Source: Gracilinanus agilis (taxonomy: Eukaryota). From it: a DNA stretch of 64,000 nucleotides. The stretch lies in contig NC_058132.1 in the NCBI RefSeq assembly GCF_016433145.1, positions 85,812,946-85,876,945 on the forward strand. Reading direction: 5' to 3'. Positions 6,257 through 64,000 of the stretch are shown here, one piece after another (position 1 is the first letter of the stretch; each line of letters begins with the position of its first letter). Made by a program: the position numbers and the translations under genes. The notes beneath the pieces were generated by a model. That model was not told the DNA's origin and did no database searches. It saw only the letters and a program-made list of their open reading frames with translations.

Positions 6257-9200
6257 GCCCTGGCTCAGAGCTCTTCTTGCTACACCCTCACTCTGGAGAG
6301 CTGAGCACAGCCGGACCCCTGAGCCGTTTGGAGAGACCCCACTATGTGCTGACAGTGAATGCTCAGGACCAGGGAAGCCCTCCCAGAAGCACCAGTCTCC
6401 AGCTGCTCCTGCAGGTACCTGAGCCACCAGAGTTCCCCAAACCTCAGACCTCAAAGCTTCCATTTCCCCAATTCCAAATCCCCTTTTGCCAACCTCAAAC
6501 CTTCCGTCCCCCAATTTCAAATCCCAATTTCTTCATCATTTCTAGTTCCTCCTAACTTCCCCAATGTGTCATTCTTAACCTCATGCCTACCTCATCTCAG
6601 CTCCAGATCTTCCCAAACAACTGTCTCCAAACTCGATGTCCCAGTTTTGCATCTCTCTCTCTTTAAACCCCTTGGGGGCCCCTCTACCCTTAAATCACCT
6701 TCTCTCTTCCCAACCTTACATGCCTCCATCCCCAAACACCCAGCACAAAATCACCTCTCTTGGCAGGTGCTGCCCCGGACCAGATCCCCGGTGGCCCCCG
6801 ATGCCTCAGCAGCCCCAGCAGTGCTGACACTAACAGCAGGAGAGGGGCTTCAGCCAGGCTCCCTGCTGGGATCCGTGGCACTGCCAGGGGCCCCCCAAGG
6901 GGTGCTTACCTACACATTGGTGGGCGGAGGTGACCCTGAGGGCACTTTTGCCCTGGATGCAGCCACGGGCCAGCTGTACCTGGCCAGACCCCTGGACTTC
7001 GAGGCCGGGCCAGCGTGGAGGGCCCTGACGGTGAGGGCCGAGGAGGCGGATGGGGGTGCTCCAGCTTACCCGGCCGGGCCTCGGCTGCTGCGTGTGGAGC
7101 TGCGTGTGGAGGACGAGAATGAGCACGCGCCCGCCTTTTCCCGTGACCCATTAACCCTGGCGCTCCCCGAGAACCCACCCCCCGGCGCGGCCATCTATAC
7201 ATTCCAAGCTACGGACGCCGACGGGCCCGGCCCAAACAGCGACGTGCGCTACCGCCTGCTGCGCCAGTCCCCCCCGGCCCCTGCCCTGCACCTGGACCCC
7301 CGCACGGGAGCCCTCAGCGCCCCCCGGGGCCTAGACCGCGAGACCACCCCAGCCCTGCTCTTGCTGGTGGAGGCCACGGACCAGGCCCGCAATAGCAGCC
7401 TGCGCCGCAGCACGCGGGTCTCGGCGAGGGTCTTCGTGACGGACGAGAATGACAACGCACCGGCCTTCGTCTCGCCCCCTGCGGCCCTGCTGCCCGAGGA
7501 CCAGCCGGCGGGCTCCGTGGCCCTCTACGTGGTGGCCCGGGACCCGGACCTGGGGGAAGCCGCGCGCCTCTCCTACCAGCTCGCCGGTGGCAGCGGCGAC
7601 GGGCACTTTCACTTGCACCCGAGCAGCGGTGAGTGGCGGGTGAGCCGGGAGGGAGAGGCAGGGCCGGGCCGGGGACGAGGCTGTCACCTGAGAACCTGCC
7701 CTCCCTCGCAGGTGCGCTGTCTGTGGCTCGGCCCCTAGACCGGGAGCAGCGGGCAGAACACACCCTGACCGTGGTGGCCTCCGACCACGGCTCCCCTCCT
7801 CGATCGGCCACTCAGCTGCTGACCGTCAGCGTGCTTGATGTCAACGACGAGGCTCCCACCTTCCCCCAGGCGGCCTACCACGTCCGTGTGTCTGAGAACC
7901 GTCCGCCGGGCACCGCTGTGCTCACTCTGCGCGCCACCGACCCCGACTTGGGTACGGCGCGTGCGGGCAGAGGCACACGCGGGGGGACGGAAGCAGGGAG
8001 AGAGGGAGGCGCTGGGCAGTGGAGGACGGGGAGGAAGCGTGGTCGATGGGCCGGGGAATGGGGGACGACAAGGCGGAGACGGAGGGAATGGGACCTCCCG
8101 TGAGGACAGGTTCGGAAGCTAGAGATGAGAAAAGTCCTCTGGCCCCCCTTCCCAAACACACACGCATTGATGTCCTCTCCACCAAGGTGTGAATGGACGA
8201 GTGACCTACGGTGGCGTCTCTGGTGACACCTTCTCCCTGGACCCCAGTACCGGAGTCCTCACGACTCGACGGGTCCTGGACCGAGAAGAGCAGCAGGAGA
8301 TCAGCCTGACTGGTATGAAAACGGAGAGGGATGCTGGACACTTGCATGATGAGTGCGAGGTGTATTCGCGTGGCCCTGAGGCTATAGCAATCATGTCCCT
8401 TCGGGATAGGGAGTATCGCTTCCTTCACCCGAGGCCAGACTCACGGTGTCTGGTTTTCTCCTGGAAGGACTTCACAGGGTGTAGCCCCTGTCCCTGTTGG
8501 GCCGGGTCTCCGACCTGAAAGGGGCATTGAGGAGAGACTTCTTATAATGGCTAGAGGCCGGAGGCTATACAAGCCAAGAAACCGGGGTTCAAGCCTTGGG
8601 TATGCTGTTATCTCCCTCTCTGGGTCTCAGCTTGACCCTTTATCAAATGAGGTGACTGGACTAGCTCTAAGGCCCCTTCTGGCTCTAAAAGTTTTTGACT
8701 CATTTGGAACCAATTTGGGATGTCAAGTGGAAAGGCGGGTCCACGTTTCTTGGTCTGGTCAGAAATTTAGCACAGTTTTGGAGAAAGTACGTGGGAAGAA
8801 AGGACTCTTTTTTTTTTTTAATATTTTATTTTTTAGAAAAATTTTCCATGGTTACATGATTCATGTTTTTACTTTCCCCTTCACCCATAGCCAACGCCCA
8901 TTTCCACTGGTTTTAACACGTGACATCAGTCAAGACTTATTTCCATATTATTGATAGCTGCATTGGTGTGGTAGTTTCAAATCTACATCCCCAATCATGT
9001 CTGCATCAACCCATGTGTTCAAGCAGTTGTTTTTCTTCTGTGGTTCCATTCCTGTAGTGAAGAAAGGACTCTTGAGGATTCTAGATCACTGTCCCTCATA
9101 ACTTCCCACACTGAGTTATGGGGCCAGTCTGAAAAAACAGTGAAATTTCCCTGAAATATCATCCCTACTCCACTTTCCAAACACCCATTAATTAATTACT

Positions 9201-12200: not shown

Positions 12201-14279
12201 TGCCTAAAGTCACACAACTCATTGACAGAGTCAGTAACAGAATTTAACTCTCCTGACTCCTAGAAAGCTTATTCCTTCCCTTAAAGATATACTATTCATC
12301 TAAACCCACAGTGAGTATTTATTAAGCATCTAATATTTGCCAGGCATTAGGCTAAGTCCTGGGAATAGGATCTTATTTTATTCTCACAACCACACTGGCA
12401 CATTATTATCCCCATTTTTTAGATGAGGAAACTGAAGCAGACAAGGGTTAAAATGTGGCTTGAGCTGGGTCACATATCTAGCAAGTGTCTGGGTTCACAC
12501 TCAAACTCATAACTGACACCAGGTCAAATGTACCACCTAGCTATTTAGGTATATGCTTGAGACTGTGTGTTTTTCGGTATGTGTGTACAGATTATGGGCT
12601 TAGTGTGGAACTGTGTCACAACTCAACAGCAGTGTGATTTATAATTGGTGCTGAGCATGTTACAGACACACATACGTGTGTGTGTGGGGGAGGGTGAATG
12701 GCTGGACACACTTGCATGTTTGTGTGTGTGTCCATATCAGTGACTTAGGAGTGGAGCGTTTTTCCAGCCTGGAGAGGATGGAATGTTACTAAGCATGGTA
12801 GAATCACATATCCAGGTGCATGCCTGGGCACATTTGTGCACCTGAGGGAGGTATATTCTTACCTGTATGGAAGTAGAGTTACTGAATATACTCTTGTGAT
12901 GGGGATTCACCAACTCTTCTCTTCCAGATTCTATCTATACATGTATGTGTGTACAGGTGCATGCTTAAGCAGGGTATGTCGTAGTACCAATTCTAGTTCC
13001 CAGATTAAGGTCTGTACTGAGTACAGCCTACACCTGTACGGGATGAACAGGATAGGGGCTCCCTGGCACTGCTTGGCTGCATCTGCCTGTATGTTGTGTA
13101 GCGGGGTACCTGCTTTGTGCGCATGTCTACACCTGGGGAACCCCGCTCTAGTTTGAATAGGATCTGTGCTGAGTACAGTATATATCTGCAGTGTATGCCC
13201 AAGATGGGGGCTCGCCACCCCTGCTGAGCCATGTCTCAGTGCATGTGACCGTGGAGGATGAAAACGACCACGCGCCAGCCTTTGGGAGCTCCCCCCTCTC
13301 CCTGGAGGTTCCTGAGGGCCAGGATCCCCAGACACTGACCGTGCTTCGGGCTTCAGACCCCGACGCTGGCCCCAATGGGCAGATTAACTATCAAATACTG
13401 AGTAAGTCACATCAAAACTTGGGACTTTCAGCCTTCCCTACAACAGGGGATCCCTACAACTTGCCCATGTAACTGTTTTCCTCCTCCTCCTCCTCACTAC
13501 CTGCCATATCCCCATTCCACAGGCCTCTGTTGCTCCTCTCCATTCCCATAGAAAACCTTCTCCCTCCATAAGACTCCTTTCCCCCTCCCCATCCCTACAG
13601 GTCCCCTCACTCCAGAGTAACTACATGCCACTCTTCTTATCTCTGCCACCCCTGGCTTCCCCCTCTTCTTCTCTTCTCCTCTCTCTGCCTCTCTTTTCCA
13701 TGTCCTTTTTTCTCTCTCTCTTTGTATTTGTTGTCTCTATACGGCCATCAATCTNNNNNNNNNNNNNNNNNNNNNNNNNNNNNNNNNNNNNNNNNNNNNN
13801 NNNNNNNNNNNNNNNNNNNNNNNNNNNNNNNNNNNNNNNNNNNNNNNNNNNNNNNNNNNNNNNNNNNNNNNNNNNNNNNNNNNNNNNNNNNNNNNNNNNN
13901 NNNNNNNNNNNNNNNNNNNNNNNNNNNNNNNNNNNNNNNNNNNNNNNNNNNNNNNNNNNNNNNNNNNNNNNNNNNNNNNNNNNNNNNNNNNNNNNNNNNN
14001 NNNNNNNNNNNNNNNNNNNNNNNNNNNNNNNNNNNNNNNNNNNNNNNNNNNNNNNNNNNNNNNNNNNNNNNNNNNNNNNNNNNNNNNNNNNNNNNNNNNN
14101 NNNNNNNNNNNNNNNNNNNNNNNNNNNNNNNNNNNNNNNNNNNNNNNNNNNNNNNNNNNNNNNNNNNNNNNNNNNNNNNNNNNNNNNNNNNNNNNNNNNN
14201 NNNNNNNNNNNNNNNNNNNNNNNNNNNNNNNNNNNNNNNNNNNNNNNNNNNNNNNNNNNNNNNNNNNNNNNNNNNNNNN

Positions 14280-20300: not shown

Positions 20301-23148
20301 TCACCCTCATCTTTTCCGTCTTGTTTCTCCCTCACCCACATCCTCCCCCCTAGTTGTGTCCTGATCATTGGCCTCCCTTCACCCCAAATCTCGGTTTCTA
20401 CCACCTGTTCTCCCCTGCTTCCCACTAATACTCCCATTGGCCTCCCTCCATTCCTGATCTAAGTTGCCTCCCCCCCACCATTTCCCCTTCTTCCCACTAA
20501 TCCCCATTTCCTCCACTTCAGGGACCCTGTTCATGATTCAGGCAGCCTCCCTGAGTCCAGGAGGTTTGGGCACAATGGACATGGTGCTGGAAGCACGAGA
20601 TCATGGAGTCCCAGGAAGGAGAGCGCAGGCCATAGTCCACATTCAGCTTCTGGATGAGAATGACTACACTCCAAGCTTTGTGCAGCCCCACTACCACATC
20701 AGCGTGGCCGAGGACTTGCCCCCAGGCTCCACGGTTTTAGTCCTAGAAGCTACAGATGCTGACCAAAGCCGACTCCACGCCACATTGGACTATACTATCA
20801 TCAGTGGCAACCGTGGACATGCCTTCCAGCTGGAAAGGCACTTGGCGGAAGGTGGTTCTGGTCCACAGGCCCTGGGCTATCTTGTGTTGCTGGAGCCACT
20901 GGACTTTGAGAGCGTCACCGAGTATAACCTAACCGTATGTGCAGCTGATAGGGGGAAGCCTCCCCGAAGCACGACCGTCCTCGTCGTCGTCACCGTGCAA
21001 GACGTCAATGACAATCCCCCCGTGTTTGCCCAGCCCCATTACCGTGTGGCTGTGCCAGAGGACACCCCCGTGGGCACCGAGCTGCTGCGTGTCGTGGCCT
21101 CTGATCCCGATCCTGGACCCCATGGTCTGGTCCGCTTCACGATCAGCTCTGGGGACCCTGCCCACCTCTTCGAGCTAGACGAAGGCTCAGGCGTCCTCCG
21201 GTTGGCCAGACAGCTGGACCGAGAGGCCCAGGCCCAGCATCAACTGGTGGTCGAAGCAGCCGACCCCCCTGGAGCCCACTTTGCACTGGTGCCAGTGACT
21301 GTGGAAGTACAAGATGTCAATGAGCACGGGCCTGCCTTTCCCCTGCTTAGCCTGAGCGCCAGCTTGCCCGAGAACCAGCCCCCAGGAACCCTGGTCACCA
21401 CCCTTCATGCCCTGGACAAAGACACGGGAGCCTTTGGGCGGCTCCACTACATGCTGCTGGAGCCGGGATTAGGGCCGGGCCTGGGAGCCAAACACTGGGA
21501 CCTGTTTGCGCTGAACGGCTCCTCGGGGGAGCTTCGGGCTCGGGTGCCTTTTGACTACGAGCACACGCGGAGCTTCCGCTTGCTTGTGGGCGCCGCAGAC
21601 GCGGGGAACCTCTCGGCCTCCGTCACCCTGTCTGTGCTGGTGACCGGCGAGGACGAGTACGATCCCGTCTTCCTGGCGCCTTCGTTCCACTTCCAGGTGC
21701 CCGAGGGTGCCCGGCGGGGCCACAGCCTAGGCCACATCCGGGCCACAGATGAGGACGGAGGCGCCGATGGCGTGATCCTGTACTCTCTTTCGGCTCCCTC
21801 CCCATATTTTGGGATCAACCAGACTACGGGCGCTCTGTACCTTCGGGTGGACAGCCAGGCGCCGGGCACGGGGTCCAGCGGAGCTGGCGGAGGAGGCCGA
21901 GCGAGGCGGGAGGCACCCCGTGAGTTACAGCTGGAGGTGGTGGCTCGAGGGCCCTTGCCTGGAGCCCGAAGTGCCGCAGTACCCGTGACCGTGGACATAA
22001 CCCACACGGCTCTAGGCCTGGCACCGGACCTCAACCTGTTGCTAGTGGGAGCCGTGGCAGCCTCCCTGGGGGTGGTGGTGGTGCTGGCACTAGCGGCCTT
22101 GGTGTTGGGGCTGGTGCGGGCCCGTGCGCACAAGGGGGAGGCAGCCCCCGTGCCCACTCTTCCACCTGCCCCCCTGAGCACCAGCTCCCTGCAAAAACCG
22201 GCCCGGGATGCCCCCAGCCCGCCACATTCTGAACACCTTTACCACCAGACGCTCCCTGGCTATGGGGGGCCCAGCACGGGGGGCCCCTACCCCCGCGGCG
22301 GCTCCCTGGACCCTTCCCACTCCAGCGGCCGGGGTTCTGCGGAGGCTGCTGAAGACGACGAGATCCGGATGATCAATGAGTTCCCCAGAGTGGCCAGCGT
22401 GGCTTCTTCGTTGGCCGCCCGAGGCCCCGACTCCGGCATCCAACAGGACGCAGATGCGGACGGTCTGAGCGACACCTCCTGCGAGCCTCCTCCCCCCGAC
22501 GCCTGGTACAAGGGCCGGAAGGCCGGGCTGCTGCTTCCGGGCCCTGGTCCGGGGCTCTATCGTGAGGAGGGCCCACCCGCCGCCAGCACTGCCGGGGCCT
22601 TCCTCGGGGGCTGTGGTCTGAGCCCGGCCCCCCCCGGAGACTATGGCTTCCCAGCGGATGGCAAACCCTGTGTGGCAGGGGCACTAACAGCTATCGTGGC
22701 TGGCGAAGAGGAGCTCCGGGGCAGCTACAACTGGGACTACCTGCTGAGCTGGTGTCCCCAATTCCAGCCATTGGCCAGTGTCTTCACTGAGATTGCCCGG
22801 CTCAAGGACGAGGCACGGCCTTGCCCGCCTGCACCCCGCATTGACCCACCACCCCTCATTACCGCTGTGGCCCACCCTGGGGCCAAGTCTGTACCCCCTA
22901 AGCCAGCTAGCTCCTCTTCAGGCCCAGGAGTCCGGGGTCCCTTCCTGCCTACCCACCGCTCCCCCATTAGCCACGAGGGATCCCTCTCCTCAGCTGCCAT
23001 GTCCCCCAGTTTTTCACCTTCGCTGTCACCGCTGGCTGCCCGCTCCCCTGTTGTCTCCCCTTTTGGGGTGGCACAGGGCCCCTCTGCCTCAGCCCTGAGT
23101 GCGGAGCCTGGCCTGGAGGCCCCTGATGAAGCAGAGCTACATATCTAG
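6257..23148 (+). CDS. DCHS1: Dachsous cadherin-related 1 (protocadherin-16), 3' portion, 13 exons; 5' exons lie upstream of the window
   Basis: Exons with GT-AG sites and consistent phases: 6257-6414, 6767-7628, 7712-7951, 8187-8312, 13192-13401, 14340-15227, 15480-15593, 15919-16130, 16344-16498, 16787-16917, 17062-17345, 19696-19834, 20522-23148 (TAG). Translation shows cadherin repeats (LDRE, DxNDNAP, DxD), RARREAP, a TM segment (LLVGAVAASLGVVVVLALAALVLGLV) and the Dachsous tail (EDDEIRMINEF, GSYNWDYLLSWCPQFQPLASVFTEIARLKDE ... ELHI). Confidence 0.97.
8815..9055 (-). mobile_element. L1 3' end with poly(A) tail (antisense)
   Basis: ttccatggttacatgattcatg ... caagcagttgtttttctt; closely similar to the copy starting near 50515. 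Confidence 0.8.
9430..9950 (-). mobile_element. Decayed RTE-clade LINE, reverse transcriptase region
   Basis: Minus-strand translation with stops: ...RIKNYCLIFL...RQAS...IADHILTVT...NIALRELYQKG...VKIL...FKDVTAKIILFD...QGIKK. This follows the RTE RT order (DIKNYRPICL; REQAGF; TADHIFT; GIKQG). Confidence 0.7.
10539..10606. repeat. (TTTTC)n microsatellite
   Basis: Direct reading. Confidence 0.95.
13755..14279. other. Assembly gap (525 N) in the DCHS1 intron 13402-14339
   Basis: Run of N. The flanking exons join in phase, so no coding exon needs to be hidden in it. Confidence 0.99.
14280..14324. repeat. (CT)n microsatellite abutting the gap and forming the polypyrimidine tract of the next DCHS1 exon
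   Basis: Direct reading. Confidence 0.95.
19930..20115 (-). mobile_element. SINE (SINE1_Mdo-like) in the last DCHS1 intron
   Basis: Same head (GGGGCAGCTAAGTAGCTCAGTGGATTGAGAGCCAGG on minus) and tail as the copy at 59000-59198. Confidence 0.8.
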
Positions 23149-32339: not shown

Positions 32340-32670
32340 AATGCAAACTGGATGGTTTCCATAGCAATCCAGATTTTTTTTTTTTTTAATTTTTAACGAA
32401 CCCTCTAGCCTCTGGCAGCTCTATGCTCTGGGTGGGAGGAGCGAAAAAAGCCGCGCCTAGTAAGAGCTAGTGGGAAACTCGGACAGGCCATTGGATACTG
32501 CGTCGCTATTGCGAGGGTAGGATGGGAGGGTGTGGCTTGAGCCGGAAGTAGGCGGAAGTCTCTTGAAGGGAGCGGAAAAACCGTGAGCGGAAACGGAAAC
32601 GGAAGTGGCTCTGTCCTCCTAGTTCTCGGTCCCGGGTCCCTTCCCTGTTCCCCGCCTCCTGCCCGGCGCC
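32340..32670 (+). promoter_or_regulatory. TAF10 CpG-island promoter with an ETS/GABP cluster and an RFX X-box
   Basis: CCGGAAGT 32542-32549, GCGGAAGT 32552-32559, CGGAAACGGAAACGGAAGTG 32588-32607; GTTTCCATAGCAAT 32355-32368. Confidence 0.7.
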
Positions 32671-34631
32671 ATGAGTGGCAGCGGCGCGGACCCCGAGGCG
32701 GTCCCGGCCCCTGCTCCTGCCCCGCCGGGCCCGGCCCCGACTCCCACCCCAACCCCTGCTCCAGCCCCGACCCCAGCACCGGCTCCCGCTCCCACCCCAG
32801 CCGAAAGCAAGGCCAGTCCCGCAGGAGGCGCCGGCCCCGGCCGGGGGGACACATCCGACCGCCGGGCCTCGGGTGAGCGGGGAGCGCGGGGGTAGCGAAC
32901 CAGGGCCCGTACAGGTTGAGGAGCCCTGGAGGGAACTGGGGCTCTCACGTGGGAGGCTCAGCTTGAGGCATCGGCATCTTGAAAAATCGTTCTGACAGAA
33001 GCAAAACTGCCCTACGATGGAGGGCTCCCCCTCCCTGGAAGTCTACAAAGGGAAGCTGGATGACCACGAGCCATCGTAGAAGAGATGCTTGCTCAGAGGG
33101 GACTGACTGGATAGCGACTGAGGTCTCCTGGAGCCCTTGAGTCTCTGAAAGATCTTCAAGGGGCGGGGTGGGTGGGACAGTGATCCTTAAGGGAGCAGGT
33201 GGAACGAGAGAATTCAGGGTGAGGAGCTGGAGAGGACCGAGTGTTACGGGCTTCCACATCAACCAGGACCACATCGTTAGGCGGGAGCAGGGCCTACTTT
33301 TGAACTCCACGCCGACCTTCTGGCCAAATATTCTACCCCTCCTACCCCCAATCTTCATTTGAAATTCCTGTTCTCTGTCCTTTACTAGTCCCAGTATCTG
33401 CAGCTGGGGGTACCGCCCCTCCTGAAGGTGCCATGTCTAATGGGGTTTATGTGCTACCCGGTGCTGCCAATGGAGAGGTCAAGCCTGTTGTGTCTAGCAC
33501 ACCCCTGGTGGACTTTCTCATGCAGTTGGAAGACTACACACCTACCGTATGTATTATCATTCTGCCATTTGCTAGTTAATTTTATTTAGCGAGGAGAATC
33601 ACATTTCCACATAGACTGTAAAATATTTGATGATCAGAACAAAAATCTTGTCTTCTCCACCTCAAATGGGCTATCTCCTATAGTAAAGCCAGATTCTCCC
33701 AGAGGTGCTAATTTCCTTTAAGGTTCATTTAAAGTGCTATACCTCCTATGTGAAACTTTTCCTGATTATTATCCCACAGCTCCCCAAAATGCCTTTTTTA
33801 AAATCTATAGATATGTATGCATACATACATTCTCCCCTCTCTCCTTAGATCATAAGCTCTTTGAAGTGGAGTAGTTTTGTTTTTGTCTTTGTATCCCAAG
33901 TGCCTAGCATTATGCCTGATAATAGTATATTCTTCATGACTGATTAAAGATTTGTTGCATTCTCAGATTCCAGATGCTGTTACTGGCTACTACCTGAACC
34001 GTGCTGGTTTTGAAGCTTCTGATCCCAGAATGTAAGTGATTTGGGATAGGAAAGCCAGTGTCCAACATCTAGTGGGCATCTCTGGCTCCTTCCTTTATAC
34101 CAAGGACCATCTTCTTTTAGAGGGAGGGCTAGTTTTATCTCCACATGCCAACTCCTTCTACCTTCCCAGTGTCCGGCTCATCTCCCTGGCAGCCCAGAAG
34201 TTCATCTCTGACATCGCCAATGATGCCCTACAGCACTGCAAGATGAAGGGCACTGCCTCAGGCAGTTCCAGAAGCAAGAGCAAAGTAAGTATATTAGTCC
34301 TAGGCTGGTCATATGATAAATGCTTTTCTTGGGGCTTAGTGGCATGTAGAACTTCAAAAACTTTTAACTGATGGAGCCTCCTTAATGATGTAAAAGCTGC
34401 AGGGATTATGAGCCCCATTTTATACACACAGAAACTCAGTTCAAATTGGTTAAGTGACTTGCCTCAGGACACGTTAGTATTAGTGCAAAAACCAAGACTA
34501 GCTCTGTGGCTCATACTGGCTCTTTCAACTTTCTTTCCTAGGACCGCAAGTATACTCTGACCATGGAAGACCTGACCCCTGCACTCAGCGAGTATGGCAT
34601 TAATGTCAAGAAGCCACATTATTTCACCTAA
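32671..34631 (+). CDS. TAF10: TATA-box binding protein associated factor 10, 5 exons, ~209 aa
   Basis: Exons 32671-32872, 33389-33546, 33967-34031, 34170-34284, 34542-34631. MSGSGADPEA start; histone-fold region [62 protein letters not shown]; C-terminus TLTMEDLTPALSEYGINVKKPHYFT*. The exon 2 acceptor is ambiguous among three in-frame AGs. Confidence 0.96.
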
Positions 34632-46400: not shown

Positions 46401-49400
46401 TGAGGACAGTGGACATAGAACCTTATTCAAATCCTGCTTCTGTCTCCTAAGTTTGTGACCTCAGGCAAGTCACTAAGCCTCTCTAAGTCTCAGTTTCCCT
46501 ATCTTTAAAATCAGAGGACTAAACTAGACGGCCTGAGGTCCTTTTCAATTCTAAATCCACCATCCTCTGATTAGATGATGTCCAAAGAGTACTGTAGCTC
46601 TTGAACCATAATTCTGTGCCTGAGTCAGGGAAGAGGAAGTACTCATCCCTTCATGTCTCAGAACCATACTCATGTATGGAAAGTGTCATCAGCTCTAACC
46701 CACTGTTACTTTTTTTTTAAATTAAGGACTTTTTGAAGAACTTTATTAAGAACTTGTGTTCTAACAAAAAGAACCATGAGAAATGTATATGAAACAACAA
46801 ACTTAAGTATAGTTCTTTTTGATGTTATATATTCAGTGTTTTTAATGTTTCATTGATTCCAAGCCTGAGATCTCCCCAGACATGTTTCATATGATTTCCC
46901 CGCACACACTGTACATTCTGGCCAAACTGACCTGCTTTCTGTTACTTCTGCCTAGCATTCCATCTCCTACCTCTCTCTTGGCACAAGCTGCCTGCCTGAG
47001 TGCCTGAGATGTTTTTCCCCCTTGCCTCCATTTTTAGAAGCTCCTCTTAAGTGCCAGCTCCTTCCTGAAGCTTTTCTGGATCCAACCTCCCCCCTTCCTA
47101 GTTGTTAGTACTTCCACTTAAAAGATAACTTTGTATATACTTACCTTGTAAGTTGTATCCTTGTCCCCGTCTCACTCCCTAGGAGGATATAACCTTCTCA
47201 ATGGCAGGTGATCATTTCATTTTTTGTCTTTGTATCTCTGTTGATGACTGCAGGGCCCTGTACATAGTACGAGTTTGATAAATTATTCTTGTCAACCTGA
47301 ATCAGCAAGTATGGTCCCCAGTTTCTAGGGCTCCTACTTTTCTCAGTGGGAGCTGAGATAGACCAGGGCTAAGAGATGGGCAGTGGGCACAGGTGTTCCC
47401 CATTACACAATGGGAAGCTGATTTCCTTCTGTCCGTGAAGTCTTTGTCTTTTCCCCAGGGCCTTCACCGTCAAAGTCTTCAGGCTACACTACAGGCACTA
47501 CAGGCTGAGGCATTTTCATATCAGCTCATTAACCAAGGGGACAATGGCTCTGACTCAGAATCTGATTCTGGGGAGAAGAAGAGAAAAAAGAGGAAGAAGA
47601 CTCCCAAAAAGGCTCCACTTATGGAGGAAAACTCAAAGTTAATAGTCCAAGGAATAAAATCCAAGAAAGAGGAAAGCAAAGGTAAAGGGGCGTTTCCCAA
47701 TTAATCATTCATTCTTTCCTTTTCATTCCAGTAGTAATAATGGCACTATAATGGATCTGGGGCTTTATCAATATGAGTACTTCCTCCAGGTTGTACTCCA
47801 TTCATCTTCTCATCCTTTATGATGCACATATATGTTTTCTCATCAGTTTTTCAGAGAGGATCTACTCGGTGCATTGGAGGCCTTTCTCCAAAAGTTCACC
47901 CTATTGGCATTAAGTGGGGTATGGCGTCAAGCAATAAGAGAGTCATCTTGTCTTTGGCCTCTGCCCTGATCAGACTTCATTTAGAGTGTTATTATCAGGT
48001 CTGGGCACCATAATGTAAAAAGGACAGAAAAAGCTGGCAACGAGGAGAGTGGAGTGTCTTAAGACCATGCCAGATGAGGATACGTTTGAAGGAAATAGAG
48101 ATATTTATCCTGAAGAAGATAAAAGCAAGAAAGGTACATTGGTAGTCTTCTGAGTGGTTAGATTTGTCATTTAACCCCATAGGGTACAATCAGGAGTGGT
48201 TGGTGGAAGCTGATGAGAAGCAAATTTTCTAGTGGCTGGTTTGAGGAAAGTGCTTTAGGGATAATTAATTGTTATTGCTGTGAGTGCCTGACCCCTTCCC
48301 CTCCCCGACAGCAATAGTTTTTTCCCAAGCTCCAACCATTCATTCACCCCTAGAATTGCCCCATCAGCCCTCCAAAATTTTACCCCCTGCAGGCTCTGGA
48401 GTCCCAAAGAGTGGTGACCTGACCCCTGTGCTTCCCCAGAAAGACTCGGGCCTCCAGAGACCCACCCTTGGCCCAATGGAAGATGGGAGTGACACAGGGC
48501 CAAGGCTAAGCCGAAAACAATGGAGAAACCGTCAGAAAAACAAAAGGAGACAGAAGAATAAGTTTCTGCCCCCAAAGCCACTGGGTGCTCCAACTCCTGA
48601 GGAGGAGGAGACCCGCCCTGCACAGACAGGAGAGTGTGAGCCAGAGTTGGGAGCAGGGGAGCCAGGGGCATCTTTGGACCGTGGTGGGGTACTGCGGGCA
48701 AAGATGAAGCAGCGGCTTGAGGGAGCTCGTTTCCGCTTTCTCAATGAGCGGCTGTACTCTGTGACAAGCAGCACAGCAAGCCACATCTTTCAGGAAGACC
48801 CAGAAGCCTTTGAGCTCTACCATCGTGGCTTTCAGAACCAGCTAAAGCGATGGCCCCTGAAGCCTGTGGATCGAATTGTGAAGGACTTGAAACAGCGGTG
48901 AGCAAGGGAGGGACCCGTGTAAAGAGGCAAAGGAGGGTGACACAGATGGGGAAGGAATGTTGGAGAGAAATGGCAGGGGGCTTGTGAGAAGTGGGGTCTG
49001 AACAGACAGGGTGTGGCAGATGATGGCAAAAAACTGGGGTGTTATGGGAGGAAAGAGCAGGCCTGTCACATGGCTAACATTAGATGGGGGATGTGGTCCA
49101 GGAGCAGGTCAAGCCCCAGGTGGCTAGGACTGTTACTCAGCTAGGCTTGTGGCTATTGCCTCTCTGCAGCCCAGCATCCCTGGTTGTGGCAGATTTTGGC
49201 TGTGGGGACTGTCGCCTTGCCTCCAGTGTCAAGAACACTGTTCACTGCTTTGACTTGGCTGCACTTGACCCCCGTGTCACCGTCTGTGACATGGCCCAGG
49301 TGAGATCCCAGTGCTGTGAATCTTTACTTCATCATCCAAATTCTCACCTTCTACTAGAAGGGTTCTCCTCCCCTCCCAAAGCCCTCAACTGTCTTTAGAA

Positions 49401-59579: not shown

Positions 59580-62500
59580 TCAGCGTATCGGGGGGCTGCA
59601 CACGTACACCCTGCGCTGGGCACAGGTGGCGGGAGACAGCTTGGTGGGCAGGGACAGGTGGAACAGGAGGTGGTCTCTGTCTAGCCGGGAAGAGCCCAGG
59701 ACCCCTCCTAGGTACACAGGGCAGAGGTAAAGAGGCAGAGGAGAGGATGGCAATATGGGATCACGGTTGTACTGGGGCCAGACGCTGACTGGGGGCAGAG
59801 GGCTGGGCTTGCCGGAGTGGCCGTCTTGCAGGGCCTTGTCCTTGGGGTCCCATTCGGCGTGGTAGACCAGCAGGTCTGTTATTAGAAGGCCGCCCTCAGG
59901 AGCTATAGGCTGCAGTCCACATTCCACCTGGGGACCCAGTCATCATGGTTAGGACCGGGGGGCATCAGGGCAAGGGCAGAGCCCCCAAGGGACCAGGCTT
60001 ATGGACACACTCTCCCTCCAGGAGAGGGGATGGGGCATGTGATGCCTACCTGAAAGTGAAGGCTGATGGCTTCAATCCCTTGGCGAGCCTGGCCCGTGCT
60101 GAAGCTGGAGGGAGGGAAATGGCCCAAGCCAAGTCCCGGGGTGGTGCTCCCACCAAAGCTCTGACTAAGGCCCAGGCGGCTATAGAAGCAGTGACTGTAT
60201 ATGGAGGAACTGCTAGGACTGAGTCCAAGGCCTCCATCAGAATCGAAGGCAGGGCCTCCATCAGAATCGAGGGCAGGGCCTCCACTGGGGCCAGGACCAG
60301 GGCCGGGTCGAGACCCCACCAGGGGGCTGGGTGCATGGCCAATTCTGGAGCCATTGTGGGGGGTGGGACCAGCCCTGAATTGGGGGCCTGCACTGGGCCT
60401 GAATCCAGGATCTGCACTGGGGCTGCGGCTGTGTCCAGGACCGAGTTGGGGGCCTGTGCTGGGCCTGAATCCAGGATCTGCACTGGGGCTGCGGCTGTGT
60501 CCAGGACCAAGTTGGGGGCCTGTGCTGGGCCTGAATCCAGGATCTTCACTGGGGCTGTGGCTGTCTCCAGGACTGAATTGGGGGCCTGTGCTGGGCCAGG
60601 GTCCAGGACCTGCACTGGGGCTACGGCTGTGTCTAGGACCAAGTTGGGGGCCTGTGCTGGGCCAGGGTCCTGGACCTGCACTGGGGCTGCGGCTGTATCT
60701 AGGACCGAGTTGGGGGCCTGTGCTGGGCCAGGGTCCAGGATCTTCACTGGGGCTGCGGCTGGGTCCAGGACCGAGGTGGGGTCCTATGCTGGGCCAGGGT
60801 CCAGGATCTGCACTGGGGCTGCGGCTGTGTCCAGGACTGAATTGGGGACCTGTTCTGGGCCAGGGTCCAGGATCTGCACTGGGGCTGCGGCTGTGTCCAG
60901 GACTGAATTGGGGGCCTGTTCTGGGCCAGGGTCCAGGATCTGCACTGGGGCTGCGGCTGTGTCCAGGACTGAATTGGGGGCCTGTTCTGGGGCTGTGGCT
61001 GGATCCAGGACTGAGTTGGGGGCCTGAACTGGGGCTGGATCCAGGTCCAGGACTGAATTGGGAGCCTATTCTGGGCCAGCGTCCAGGGTCTGCACTGGGG
61101 CTGCGGCTGGGTCCAGGACTGAGTTGGGGGCCTATTCTGGGGCTGTGGCTGGATCCAGGACTGAGTTGGGAGCCTGAACTGGGGCTGGGTCCAGGTCCAG
61201 GACTGAATTGGGAGCCTATTCTGGGCCAGCGTCCAGGGTCTGCACTGGGGCTGTGGCTGGATCCAGGACTGAGTTGGGGGCCTGAACTGGGGCTGGGTCC
61301 AGGTCCAGGACTGAATTGGGAGCCTATTCTGGGCCAGCGTCCAGGATCTGCACTGGGGCTGCGGCTGGGTCCAGGACTGAGTTGGGGGCTGGGGCTGAGT
61401 CTAGTACTGAGTTGGGGGCCTATGCCAGGCCAGGGTCCAGGGTCTGCACTGGGGCTGAGGCTGGGTCCAGGACTGAATTGGGGGCCTGCACTGGGGCTGT
61501 GGCTGGGTCTGGTACTGAGATGGAGTCCTATGCTGGGCCAGCGTCCAGGATCTGCACTGGGGCTGCGGCTGGGTCCAGGACTGAATTGGGGGCCTATGCT
61601 GGGCCAGGGTCCAAAACTGAGTTGGGGGCCTACACTGGGGCTGGGGCCAAGTCTGGTACTGAGTTGGGGGCCTGCATTGGGGCTGGGTCCGGGTCCAGGA
61701 CTAAGTTGGGGGCCTGCACTGGGGCTGGGTCCGGGTCCAGGACTAAGTTGGGGGCCTGCACTGGGGCTGGGTCCAGAACTGAGTTGGGGCCCTGCACTGG
61801 GGCTGGGTCCAGGTCCAGGACTGAGTTGGGGGCCTGCCCTGGGGCTGGGTCCAGGACTGAGTTGGGGGTCTGCACTGTGGCTGGGTCCAGGTCCAGGACT
61901 GAGTTGGGGGCCTGCCCTGGGGCTGGGTCCAGGACTGAGTTGGGGGTCTGCACTGTGGCTGGGTCCAGGTCCAGGACTGAGTTGGGGGCCTGCATTGGCA
62001 GAGCCTTGTCTGGGGGATGGTTTAGGAGAGGCGGAGATGTAGCTAGGGCGCAACTGGAAACGAGGGTGGACACCAGGGACGGTGGCTGGGCAGACCCGAG
62101 GTTGGTGAGGGCCAGAGATGGCGTGTGTGCTTAGATTTCCAGTAAGGAAGGGACAGATCCAATTCTGGCTGGCCTCCCAGCGAATGGCCAGCAGTAACCC
62201 TCTGGGGTGACGGAAGGCCGACAGGTGAAAGGAGCGGTTGTACTGGTCAAGCCCTGCCCCTCCGAACTGCCCACACAGACTTAGGTATCTGGTTAGCAAC
62301 TGGCCCTTGCGCCATAGCTGGTGCAGCCAGAGCCAGGGTGGCTGGGGCCCAGCGGATGCGTGCTGCTTCCATGGTGGAGGGAGCCGGCCAGCCCAAAGAG
62401 CCACAGCCACTTTTTCACATCGTAGGGAGGAACAAGGAAGGTCCCCTGCCAGCCGCCTCTGCAGGCAGCAAAGGTCACTGTGCAGCTCTAGCAACAGCAA

Positions 62501-62877
62501 ACCCAGGGCTGTGCCCTCCTCCTCCAAGAAGCCTTCCACAGTCTGCAGCCCTTTAGAAGTGTTCCAACCTAGAGTCTTGCTATGGGAGCTCAAAGTCAGC
62601 ATGGCCTGCAGTGCTTTGAGCCTCCGGATGGCCTGGGACACTCGATGCTTCAGTCGATACTCTACCTTATGAAGGGCCTGGGCCTGGGCACTGGGCAGTC
62701 TTAAGGGTCCCCAGAGATCCTGGGCCTGCTGCAGAGAAGCCCAAAGGGACCGACTCTGTTTCTGAGAGAGCCAAGCCTGGGGCCCTTCAGTTAATCCACA
62801 GTTGCGAGGTTCAGATAGTGTAGTTATCAGGTGTGCTTGGGTCTCTATCTCTGATATTGCATCCAACTCCAGCAGCT
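59580..62877 (-). CDS. DNHD1: Dynein heavy chain domain 1, last two exons (60050-62877 and 59580-59927); upstream exons are beyond the window
   Basis: Acceptor ...tcaatcctctag at 62878. Conserved LWAGRLPPPW, PQPPWLWLHQLWRKGQLL, FHLSAFRHPRGLLLA. Donor LHFQ|gtaggc at 60050/60049, 122-bp intron, acceptor cag|GTG at 59927, then HAEWDP ... LYLCPVY ... LPTKLSPATCAQRRVYVCSPP. Phases agree (2828 = 2 + 942 x 3). Synteny next to RRP8 supports the call. Confidence 0.92.
60372..61996 (-). repeat. Coding mosaic minisatellite inside the penultimate DNHD1 exon (36/42/66-bp units; 78/108/150-bp higher-order units)
   Basis: Periods read directly: 66 bp (nine consecutive units at 60395-60988), 78 bp (61831 vs 61909), 108 bp (61213 vs 61321), 150 bp (61063 vs 61213). 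It encodes xGPQ(L/F)SPG...SPS(ADPGPWP) repeats. Confidence 0.97.
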
Positions 62878-63539
62878 CTAGAGGATTGAGAAGGTGAGGA
62901 TGGAGGGTGTCATCCCCCACACACCAAAGGGAGGGCTTTCCCCCATGCCCAGGGTCTCCCGCACAAGGGAAAGCCCTGCATCCGCAGACACCCACAGAGG
63001 AAATTGTGCACATACAGATATCAAAACTCCTCCTTTGCTATACTTGGGGGATGTCCACATACACACAGAAAGACTCCCTCTCTACCACATGCATGCACAC
63101 TCACGCAATCTCATAGTCACAAGGCAAACAGAATGGCTACTCCAGGCTCAAGATGTTCCATGTATCTTCAATCCAAAATGGTAGCTCATGGGATACAGAG
63201 GCCCACCTGATCTCCACCAAAAACCTGTGAGAGAATGGCTCAAAACAAATTTTGGAGCAACACAACCCACAAAGACAGGGTGAAATATTTCAGCCCAAAA
63301 TAACTTAGAAGGCTAGCACAAAAGACCTGTTGCACCAGGGTGGGAGTAGAGTACAAGCAGCATGCCAAGACAGGCCCCACTGAGGCAGCGAGCCTTGGGG
63401 GCAGTTGAATTGGCTGCAAAGGCTTCCAGAACTCGGGCCACAGACAGGGCGATTGGACAACTTCTCAGAAGGGGATTACAGAGGTCTCTTTGCTGGCTCT
63501 GAGTACAAGACATTGTATGACATTGTCCATACACAGATA

Positions 63540-64000
63540 CAGGTCACAGTCCCCTATCAGATTGGCTATTATCACAGAAAAGGAAAATGACAAAATTTGG
63601 AGGGGAATGTGAGAAAACCAAGACATTAATACACTGTGGAGGGAGCTGTAAACTGACCCATCCATTCTGGAGAGCAATTTGGACCTTTGGGCTATCCAAC
63701 AGTACATGCCCTTTGGCTCAGCAATATCACTACTAGCTTTGTATATCTAAAGAGCTAATAAACAAAAAGGGGAAGGACCTATATGTACAAAAATAAAGCA
63801 GCTTTTTGTGGGGGCAAAGAATTGGAAAGTGAGAGGATGCCCCTCAGCCAGGGAATGGCTGAGTTAAGTTATAGTGTGTGATTAGAGTGGAATACTATTG
63901 TTCTGTAAGAAATGATGAACAAGAGGAGCTCATAAAAATCTAGAAAGACTTAGACAAACTGAAGAAGAGTGAAGTAGAACCAGGAGAACATTGTATACAG
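63540..64000 (+). mobile_element. L1 ORF2 C-terminal fragment in a DNHD1 intron
   Basis: ggaatgtgagaaaaccaagacattaatacactg ... cattctggagagcaatttgg; gcaaagaattggaaagtgaga ... gggaatggctga; same motifs as the copy at 50870-51091. Confidence 0.8.

What the first reader, a model, noticed from the sequence alone, without database searches (positions are those of the whole stretch)
60050..62877. DNHD1 carries a ~660-aa in-frame Pro/Gly/Ser insertion built on a tandem repeat in its dynein C-terminal domain
Seen: the penultimate DNHD1 exon is 2,828 bp with no stop in 942 codons. Conserved DNHD1 sequence (FHLSAFRHPRGLLLAIRWEA, ending ~62171) is separated from the conserved exon end (SLHFQ|gtaggc, 60050) by ~700 codons. 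About 540 of these are repeats such as AGPQLSPGPGPSPS and TGPQFSPGHSRSPSADPGPWPR. Splice phases on both sides match, so simple splicing includes the whole array. Recalled, not searched: human DNHD1 has only ~40 aa between these two motifs, and DNHD1 variants cause sperm-flagellum defects in human and mouse. Inference: a lineage-specific, probably disordered module with dozens of Ser-Pro (proline-directed kinase) sites and periodic Trp. It appears inserted in a loop of the dynein C-terminal region, between the F.LSAF..P..LL helix and the GL...AEWD strand. It could act as a phospho-regulated or elastic tether in marsupial sperm axonemes. A link to didelphid sperm pairing is pure speculation.
Basis: partly seen in the sequence, partly recalled or inferred. 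Interest (0 to 1): 0.85.

Follow-up and report, generated by a model that had tools for sequence, protein, structure and literature searches.

The report
Coding minisatellite expansion in opossum DNHD1
In this opossum, the second-to-last exon of the sperm-flagellum dynein gene DNHD1 holds a 1.6-kb in-frame tandem repeat that would add about 540 floppy Pro/Ser/Gly residues to a surface loop; it looks like a tolerated repeat expansion, not a purpose-built module, and nobody has yet shown that it is translated.

Summary
It carries the Dynein_C domain, then about 694 residues, then a conserved exon end (..ARQGIEAISLHFQ|gtaggc). A 122-nt intron and a terminal exon with stop and AATAAA follow.

Thirty-one in-register units of 12, 14, 22 or 32 aa (61993-60371) make up 541 residues. 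The same interval, measured from FHLSAF to the QRRV motif near the C-terminus, is 139-144 residues in reptiles and amphibians and 151-178 in most of about 65 eutherian sequences. It is 348 in the Monodelphis NCBI model and 830 here. The sugar glider has only about 135 aa between the two insert-flanking motifs. So marsupials already had a 135-210-aa insert, and this species added about 480 aa by local repeat amplification.

AlphaFold2 of the Monodelphis orthologue puts the insert in a disordered loop between a helix and a short helix plus strand.

For translation: the frame matches both flanks, the array has no frameshift or stop over roughly 128 substitutions, and no credible internal splice sites were found. 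Against a sequence-specific function: differences among copies are split neutrally between synonymous and non-synonymous.

No RNA, protein or read data could be reached. The Ensembl and Dromiciops models splice differently here. Best reading: a translated, tolerated coding minisatellite in a permissive loop (about 0.57). The tether and phospho-switch ideas are untested.

The parts
60050..62877 (-). Penultimate DNHD1 exon, 2,828 bp: 2 bases completing a split codon plus 942 open codons
   Evidence: Translation; splice sites read; best donor in a crude position-weight-matrix scan
62165..62875 (-). Conserved Dynein_C part (exon residues 1-237, up to ..LLLAIRWEASQ)
   Evidence: Pfam PF18199 E=2.6e-09; 90% identical to Monodelphis and 79% to Petaurus DNHD1; profile match to DNAH6 chain 8j07_g5, E=5e-25
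61994..62164 (-). Non-repeat N-flank of the insert (residues 238-294), with the marsupial-conserved motif CPA.VPG.HPRFQLRP
   Evidence: 77% identical to Monodelphis without gaps; 53% to Petaurus, with the motif kept in the same frame
60371..61993 (-). Tandem array: 31 units (13 of 22 aa, 12 of 14 aa, 4 of 12 aa, 1 of 32 aa, 1 partial) of the types xGPQLSPGPGPSPS and xGPQFSPGHSRSPSADPGPWPR
   Evidence: No stop and no non-3n indel. Neutral synonymous/non-synonymous pattern.
60095..60370 (-). Non-repeat C-flank of the insert (residues 836-927). Includes a 24-bp repeat of 2.3 copies at 60229-60284 and the conserved FYSRLGLS..F motif.
   Evidence: Monodelphis has three copies of the 8-aa unit; the window has two.
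60050..60094 (-). Ancestral exon end GQARQGIEAISLHFQ. It is homologous to eutherian ..KRQELNSNPLHLR and to reptile ARAEKQDVDTYHLDQL.
   Evidence: AlphaFold2 predicts a short helix plus a strand here in the Monodelphis orthologue.
59928..60049 (-). Last intron, 122 nt (gtaggc...ccccag)
   Evidence: The junction position is shared with eutherians (HLR|VENG versus HFQ|VECG).
59580..59927 (-). Terminal coding exon (115 aa, VECGLQPIAPEGG..AEWD..SPPIR, stop at 59582-59580). AATAAA lies at 59567-59562.
   Evidence: 90% identical to Monodelphis
48284..49398 (+). Context: two exons with RRP8-type Methyltransf_8 matches, convergent with DNHD1
   Evidence: Pfam PF05148, E=4.9e-28 and 1e-14. The same neighbour lies beside the Petaurus DNHD1-like gene.

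Best explanation
This is the 3' end of an intact DNHD1 orthologue in an opossum other than the Monodelphis domestica reference. In the therian ancestor, the junction between a helix of the dynein C-terminal domain (..HPRGLLLAIRWEA) and the following short helix and strand (ARQGIEAISLHFQ-V) began to take on Ser/Pro/Gly-rich filler. Marsupials carried 135-210 residues of it. In this lineage a local GC-rich proto-repeat, present as 2-3 units in Monodelphis, was amplified to 31 units, probably by replication slippage or unequal exchange. That added about 480 residues and made a loop of about 694 residues inside a 2.8-kb exon.

I infer that the array is spliced into the mRNA and translated as a disordered loop on the surface of the C-terminal domain. 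Selection keeps only the reading frame, because the essential beta-rich end of the domain lies downstream. The amino-acid sequence of the units drifts freely.

Shown here: the anatomy, the comparative lengths, the predicted loop position, and the substitution and indel patterns. Inferred: inclusion in mRNA, translation, and lack of a specific function.
For: The gene is DNHD1: Pfam Dynein_C, best hits to DNHD1 of wombat, sugar glider, Dromiciops and Monodelphis, and convergent RRP8 synteny.

The interval grows stepwise across 80 sequences. FHLSAF to QRRV is 139-144 residues in reptiles and amphibians, 151-178 in most eutherians, 348 in Monodelphis (NCBI model) and 830 here.

The Petaurus model P0001 is a single contiguous 1,329-bp genomic ORF with only about 135 aa between the two motifs. 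Eutherian genomic ORF fragments show both motifs in one exon, with the same donor position.

The insert flanks keep the same frame and conserved motifs in the window, Monodelphis and Petaurus. The repeat unit is local only.

AlphaFold2 of Monodelphis residues 4287-4946 gives helix 309-324, then residues 326-530 without secondary structure at pLDDT 25-46, then helix 531-538 and strand 540-546, followed by a confident beta domain. The top fold matches are dynein motors. Composition places the insert on the disordered side of the Uversky boundary.

Unit trees suggest roughly 128 substitutions among copies, with no non-3n indel despite 57 homopolymer runs of 4 or more bases. P is at most about 0.006 at an indel-to-substitution ratio of 0.05. 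At about 100 events, P(no stop) is about 0.06.

The annotated donor is the strongest in the exon. The donor position used by the Ensembl models reads GGT|GTCCAC here and scores about -10. The strongest internal donor and acceptor candidates I compared do not form a frame-preserving pair that spares conserved sequence.

Among copies, 11 variants are synonymous and 30 non-synonymous, against a neutral expectation of about 0.26 synonymous. Variants by codon position are 9/7/9. A preprint notes that human DNHD1 has multiple disordered insertions in its motor domain (10.1101/2025.01.18.633724).
Against: No transcript, proteomic or read-level evidence could be reached.

The Ensembl models of Monodelphis and wombat splice ..VPG|VECG.., removing the whole insert. 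The NCBI Dromiciops model enters a 12-aa repeat in a different frame and leaves it through an internal donor. Annotators therefore disagree, and frame conservation may not hold in every marsupial.

A 2.8-kb internal exon is unusual for a vertebrate.

The indel argument depends on noisy tree lengths from short units and on an assumed neutral indel rate. The underlying 6-bp (X-Pro) periodicity biases slippage towards in-frame changes.

The selection test has low power: dN/dS down to roughly 0.45 is not excluded.
Confidence: 0.57

Rival explanations
1. The array is in the genome but is removed from most mature DNHD1 mRNA, either as an exitron or through an alternative donor upstream of about 62070. 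The protein would then keep a short loop or lose the segment.
For: The Ensembl models for Monodelphis (P0029) and wombat (P0002) join ..VPG to VECG.., and the NCBI Dromiciops model leaves the repeat through an internal donor. Very long internal exons are rare. Copies diverge neutrally at the amino-acid level.
Against: The VPG donor reads GGT|GTCCAC in the window and scores about -10 in the crude matrix. In Petaurus the protein reads VPGA, and every Ala codon starts GC, so no GT can follow the Gly codon there (inference from the genetic code; the DNA was not seen). That splice would also delete the ARQGIEAISLHFQ helix and strand, which is conserved from amphibians to mammals and confidently folded. 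Among the strongest internal donors and acceptors I compared, no frame-preserving pair spares conserved sequence. No frameshifting indel or stop has accumulated in the array, which is not expected for intronic DNA. The NCBI Monodelphis model keeps the whole exon.
Confidence: 0.2
2. The array is translated and adaptive. It would be a length-selected, proline-directed phospho-regulated or entropic-spring tether on the DNHD1 C-terminal domain, tuned to didelphid sperm biology.
For: There are 54 Ser-Pro sites and regular Trp/Arg positions. The frame is preserved. DNHD1 is needed for the sperm flagellum in human and mouse (PMC9916431). Reproductive proteins often evolve fast (general knowledge).
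Against: There is no excess of synonymous change and no codon-position bias among copies. The conserved Trp is replaced by Phe-Arg in the last three units. Monodelphis, also a didelphid, has only 2-3 units. No family or feature match was found for the array. No phosphorylation or expression data exist.
Confidence: 0.1
3. The array length is an assembly artefact, with copy number inflated or collapsed in a GC-rich minisatellite, or DNHD1 is decaying in this species.
For: GC-rich tandem arrays are hard to assemble. Only the last two exons of the gene lie in the window, so the rest of the gene was not checked.
Against: Copies are 69-100% identical, with a nested higher-order pattern, rather than being identical blocks. 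There are no Ns nearby. Both flanks are collinear with Monodelphis. The two visible exons are 90% identical to Monodelphis, with intact splice sites, stop and poly(A) signal.
Confidence: 0.08

Closest known systems
DNHD1 (dynein heavy chain domain-containing protein 1) of Monodelphis domestica, NCBI model of 4,946 aa
   Same: The gene, the exon, the insertion site and the frame are the same. The flank motifs match (CPAT.PG.xPRFQLRPSYIS....FSTGQARQGIEAISLHFQ). Proto-repeat units such as AGPQLSTGPGPSPS are present.
   Different: Monodelphis has about 210 aa at the site with 2-3 units. The window has about 694 aa with 31 units, a net gain of about 480 aa.
Disordered insertions of eutherian DNHD1, the 'orphan', probably non-motile dynein heavy chain
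   Same: A preprint reports multiple disordered insertions in the human DNHD1 motor domain (10.1101/2025.01.18.633724). Eutherians already carry about 32 Ser/Pro/Gly-rich residues at this exact site.
   Different: The eutherian insert here is about 20 times shorter and is not a tandem array.
Coding minisatellites (in-frame VNTRs in disordered parts of proteins, such as mucins, involucrin and many reproductive proteins); comparison from general knowledge
   Same: Head-to-tail GC-rich units whose length is a multiple of 3, a nested higher-order structure, local origin, an in-frame position inside an exon, and low-complexity Pro/Ser/Gly sequence.
   Different: The array sits inside a folded motor-domain module rather than in a tail or linker. 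Copy-number polymorphism, the usual hallmark, was not testable.
Exitrons (cryptic introns inside coding exons)
   Same: A long, internally repetitive stretch of a coding exon that some gene models treat as intron.
   Different: No convincing internal donor and acceptor pair in the same phase was found, and there is no RNA evidence.

Membership tests
DNHD1 orthologue (dynein heavy chain C-terminal domain) | Dynein_C domain recognisable by profile | tested here: met
   PF18199, E=2.6e-09, 37.2 bits against a cut-off of 25.7. Profile of orthologues against DNAH6 chain 8j07_g5, E=5e-25. Fold matches to dynein motors, probability 1.00.
DNHD1 orthologue (dynein heavy chain C-terminal domain) | Closest relatives are proteins annotated DNHD1, not other dynein heavy chains | tested here: met
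   Among 1.84 billion representatives, the named top hits are DNHD1 of Petaurus (76%) and wombat (73%), followed by eutherian, reptile and amphibian DNHD1. Identity to Monodelphis DNHD1 is 90%.
DNHD1 orthologue (dynein heavy chain C-terminal domain) | Conserved synteny with a convergent RRP8 gene | tested here: met
   Methyltransf_8 exons at 48284-49398 on the plus strand. The same neighbour lies beside the Petaurus DNHD1-like gene.
DNHD1 orthologue (dynein heavy chain C-terminal domain) | Whole gene intact (about 4,700 aa of upstream exons) | not testable with these tools
   Only the last two exons lie in the window.
Coding minisatellite / in-frame VNTR | Tandem head-to-tail units with a length that is a multiple of 3, in frame with both exon flanks | tested here: met
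   All TRF periods are multiples of 3. There are 31 in-register units. The frame is continuous from FHLSAF.. to ..SLHFQ.
Coding minisatellite / in-frame VNTR | Copy-number variation between individuals or close species | tested here: inconclusive
   Between species: 2-3 units in Monodelphis against 31 here. Within the species this was not testable.
Coding minisatellite / in-frame VNTR | Present in mature mRNA and in the protein | not testable with these tools
   Fragment searches found no marsupial transcripts. No paper mentions both DNHD1 and opossum.
Intrinsically disordered loop insertion | Predicted lack of structure, with an insertion point between secondary-structure elements | tested here: met
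   For the Monodelphis orthologue, residues 326-530 have pLDDT 25-46 and no DSSP elements, between H309-324 and H531-538/E540-546. The window's insert has mean hydropathy 0.408, below the boundary of 0.423. The window's own array was not folded.
Exitron | Internal GT..AG pair of credible strength, in the same phase, inside the exon | tested here: not met
   In a crude weight matrix built from remembered consensus frequencies, the best donor is the annotated one (4.8). Donors between the domain and the array score -2.2 or less. The best internal acceptor (60098) is in phase 2 and has no suitable partner. MaxEntScan was not available.
Proline-directed phospho-regulated module | Conserved Ser/Thr-Pro sites under purifying selection, with evidence of phosphorylation | tested here: inconclusive
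   54 Ser-Pro dipeptides exist, but there is no selection signal among copies. Phosphorylation was not testable.

The most novel reading that the evidence does not exclude
The 31-unit array is translated in testis. This opossum's DNHD1 then carries a Pro/Ser/Gly-rich tether of about 700 residues on its C-terminal domain. Array length is under selection and is regulated by proline-directed phosphorylation. It would be a lineage-specific structural adaptation of the sperm axoneme and an unusually large module tolerated inside a dynein motor domain.
Probability: 0.08. Interest if true: 0.6.

Novelty: new member of a known kind. Interest (0 to 1): 0.35.

Why it matters
If translated, this would be an unusually large disordered insertion inside a dynein heavy-chain C-terminal domain. 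It would show how much extra sequence that junction can carry, which is useful for dynein engineering and for reading DNHD1 variants in male infertility.

It also gives a clean stepwise series for loop growth by repeat amplification: 0 aa in reptiles, about 30 in eutherians, about 135-210 in other marsupials and about 694 here.

There is a practical point too. The Ensembl models for Monodelphis and wombat probably misannotate this exon, because they splice out a conserved helix and strand. Otherwise this is an ordinary coding minisatellite with no sign of a specific function.

Tried and rejected
1. Transcript evidence. I searched the 5.8-billion-protein collection with the Monodelphis C-terminal 232 aa and with the window exon. 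I was looking for spliced or unspliced marsupial fragments. Only eutherian fragments and the Petaurus model came back.

2. Orthologous DNA for dN/dS and splice-site comparison. The look-up of encoding contigs returned no DNA for Monodelphis (gene range too long) or Petaurus (file too large).

3. Family assignment of the repeat. Pfam found nothing beyond Dynein_C at E up to 1. The ESM Atlas gave only low-complexity look-alikes below 0.9, with recognition 748.

4. Literature. No paper holds both 'DNHD1' and 'opossum'.

5. A dispersed repeat or transposon origin is rejected, because the unit occurs only inside 60423-61990.

6. An antisense gene is rejected. The 613-aa plus-strand ORF (60201-62042) is explained by composition; that frame is simply stop-free in the array.

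7. The preceding exon was sought in 62878-64000 by tblastn and is not in the window.

8. Earlier scan notes contain nothing on DNHD1.
Full report
**Observation.** Read on the minus strand from 62875, the sequence is open for 942 codons down to 60050. The other two minus-strand frames contain stops. The exon is bounded by ..ctctag|AG at 62877 and CAG|gtaggc at 60050/60049.

A 122-nt intron follows. Then comes a terminal exon, 59927-59580 (VECGLQPIAPEGG..AEWD..SPPIR-stop), in phase, with AATAAA at 59567-59562. Pfam finds Dynein_C in exon residues 72-250. FHLSAFRHPRGLLLAIRWEA lies at residues 216-235, and the exon ends GQARQGIEAISLHFQ.

Tandem Repeats Finder reports overlapping arrays across 60375-61998, with periods from 18 to 204 bp, all multiples of 6. 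At the protein level I parsed 31 in-register units covering residues 295-835 (61993-60371). There are 13 units of 22 aa, 12 of 14 aa, 4 of 12 aa, one of 32 aa and a partial one. The unit is found only there in the 64-kb window. The insert is 24% Pro, 21% Ser and 16% Gly, with 54 Ser-Pro dipeptides and 12 Trp.

**What the gene is.** A scan of 1.84 billion representative proteins with the conserved 262 residues returned 17 hits. The named ones are all DNHD1: sugar glider (76% identity), wombat (73%), then eutherians, a lizard and amphibians. A second search added Dromiciops and two Monodelphis domestica models.

The window is 90% identical to Monodelphis in the conserved part and in the terminal exon, and 79% identical to sugar glider. 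It is therefore an opossum, but not the Monodelphis reference. Other notes of this scan also call this genome an opossum. RRP8-type methyltransferase exons lie convergently at 48284-49398, as they do next to the sugar-glider gene. Only the last two DNHD1 exons are in the window.

**Comparative anatomy of the site.** I measured the distance from FHLSAF to the C-terminal QRRV motif in 80 sequences.
- Lizards and amphibians: 139-144 residues.
- About 65 eutherians: mostly 151-178. A low-quality tenrec model reads 219 because it runs into the intron.
- The two Ensembl marsupial models: 156-158.
- Dromiciops: 220.
- The Monodelphis NCBI model: 348.
- The window: 830.

In reptiles the helix runs straight into ..ETARAEKQDVDTYHLDQLV. 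Eutherians have about 32 Ser/Pro/Gly-rich residues between RWEA and ..PLHLRV. The marsupial ..ARQGIEAISLHFQV is the counterpart of the reptile ARAEKQDVDTYHLDQLV.

Eutherian genomic ORF fragments (P0004, P0006, P0007) run from FHLSAF through ..PLHLR into the intron. Both motifs therefore share one exon, and the donor position is the same as here. The sugar-glider model P0001 is a single contiguous 1,329-bp ORF with about 135 aa at the site and no array. The Monodelphis NCBI model has about 210 aa at the site, including 2-3 units of the kind amplified here.

The non-repeat flanks of the insert are collinear and in the same frame in the window, Monodelphis and sugar glider. Identity to Monodelphis is 76-77%. 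Three motifs are kept across roughly 80 My of marsupial divergence (date from general knowledge): CPA.VPG.HPRFQLRP, FYSRLGLS..F and RQGIEAI.L.FQ.

The insert is therefore old in marsupials. What is specific to this lineage is about 480 extra residues from local repeat amplification.

**Structure.** I ran AlphaFold2 on Monodelphis residues 4287-4946 with a 38-sequence alignment.
- Confident helices run up to residue 324; this is the ..HPRGLLLAIRWEASQ helix.
- Residues 326-530 have no secondary structure, with pLDDT of 25-46.
- Helix 531-538 and strand 540-546 follow; this is ARQGIEAISLHFQVEC.
- A confident beta-rich domain comes next.

The top fold matches are dynein motor domains. The orthologue profile aligns over the whole domain with human DNAH6 in the axoneme structure 8j07. 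The window's insert falls on the disordered side of the charge-hydropathy boundary.

The nearer landmark on the downstream side is the ARQGIEAISLHFQV helix and strand, not the GL..AEWD strand.

**Is the array coding?** The open frame alone is weak evidence.
- An antisense frame is also stop-free across the array.
- Only 2.8% of single-base changes in the coding frame would create a stop. P(no stop) is therefore 0.43 to 0.06 for 30-100 events.

Stronger points are these.
- The frame joins two conserved coding flanks, in three marsupials with very different insert lengths.
- Unit trees imply roughly 128 substitutions, yet there is not one non-3n indel despite 57 homopolymer runs of 4-5 bases. 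P is at most about 0.006 at an indel-to-substitution ratio of 0.05. That ratio comes from general knowledge, and the tree lengths are noisy.
- In a crude donor and acceptor matrix built from remembered consensus frequencies, the annotated donor is the best in the exon.
- The donor implied by the Ensembl models reads GGT|GTCCAC here and scores about -10.
- Among the best internal donors and acceptors, none form an in-phase pair that spares conserved sequence.

**Is the sequence of the array constrained?** It is not detectably constrained. Among distinct single-base variants relative to unit consensus, 11 are synonymous and 30 non-synonymous, against an expected synonymous share of about 0.26. 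Variants fall 9/7/9 on the three codon positions in the 22-aa units. The two wrong frames give the same picture. Power is low, and dN/dS near 0.5 is not excluded.

**Discordant gene models.** The Ensembl models of Monodelphis (P0029) and wombat (P0002) join ..VPG directly to VECG... This drops the insert and also the conserved, confidently folded ARQGIEAISLHFQ segment. The sugar-glider protein reads VPGA at that point. Since Ala codons start GC, it cannot have a GT donor there; this is an inference from the genetic code, as the DNA was not seen. I regard these models as probable homology-projection artefacts, but I cannot prove it.

The NCBI Dromiciops model enters a 12-aa repeat (LNLALVLAPKVA-like) and leaves it by an internal donor. 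By eye this looks like the +1 frame of the same Pro/Gly repeat. That could be a real frameshift, an assembly indel or a true alternative splice. It is the main comparative evidence against universal frame conservation.

**Mechanism proposed.** A GC-rich minisatellite grew by slippage or unequal exchange inside a permissive disordered loop. The mRNA strand is about 42% C, derived from the GC content and skew.

Only in-frame alleles survive, because the downstream 130 residues complete the C-terminal domain. The units themselves drift. The likely product is a DNHD1 about 480 aa longer than in Monodelphis, with a floppy loop of about 694 residues.

This fits a report that DNHD1 carries several disordered insertions and has lost the AAA1 Walker B residues, so it may be non-motile (preprint 10.1101/2025.01.18.633724). 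DNHD1's role in sperm flagella in human and mouse is documented (PMC9916431). A tether or phospho-switch role is not excluded, but nothing here supports it.

**Limits.** I could reach no RNA, proteome or read data and no orthologous DNA. The array itself was not folded. The splice scoring is crude.

**Verdict.** The feature is a new member of a known kind, a lineage-specific coding minisatellite in a disordered loop. Interest is moderate to low until inclusion in mRNA is shown.

Noticed in passing
window 60229-60284 (-): A second small coding tandem repeat lies in the C-flank of the insert: a 24-bp unit in 2.3 copies (GGPALDSD / GGPAFDSD). Monodelphis has three copies of the corresponding 8-aa unit, so this one also varies between opossums.
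   Followed up: partly
P0029 (Monodelphis, Ensembl F7FRE2) and P0002 (wombat, Ensembl A0A4X2K2J9): Both models splice ..VPG|VECG.. and so omit the conserved ARQGIEAISLHFQ helix and strand, which every other tetrapod DNHD1 keeps. This is probably a misannotation of the penultimate exon.
   Followed up: partly
P0028 (Dromiciops gliroides, NCBI model), last ~230 residues: The model contains about five tandem 12-aa units (LNLALVLAPKVA-like). They look like the Pro/Gly repeat read in another frame, and the model then splices to the terminal exon. This suggests an independent or shared repeat at the same site, and either a frameshift, an assembly indel or an alternative donor.
   Followed up: no
window 60201-62042 (+): A 613-aa antisense ORF (Gly/Leu/Pro-rich) spans the whole array. 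It is a by-product of the repeat's composition and shows that an ORF here is not evidence of a gene.
   Followed up: yes
window 60250-62250: The plus strand is strongly G-rich (GC 0.64-0.66, GC skew +0.2 to +0.32) with many G4-G5 runs. This is typical of unstable GC-rich minisatellites. G-quadruplex potential on the DNHD1 template strand was not examined.
   Followed up: no
window 6841-7569, 21674-22721 and 32632-32874: Weak tblastn matches (23-37% identity) of the Monodelphis insert to other Pro/Gly-rich stretches in the window. They are probably unrelated low-complexity coding or GC-rich sequence.
   Followed up: no
window 13755-14279: A run of 525 N (assembly gap or masked stretch), far from the finding.
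   Followed up: no
P0083 (Tenrec ecaudatus, 'LOW QUALITY PROTEIN'): This is the only eutherian with a long interval (219). The excess comes from reading through the last intron (..PLHFRVRASPFRPR..), not from a repeat.
   Followed up: partly
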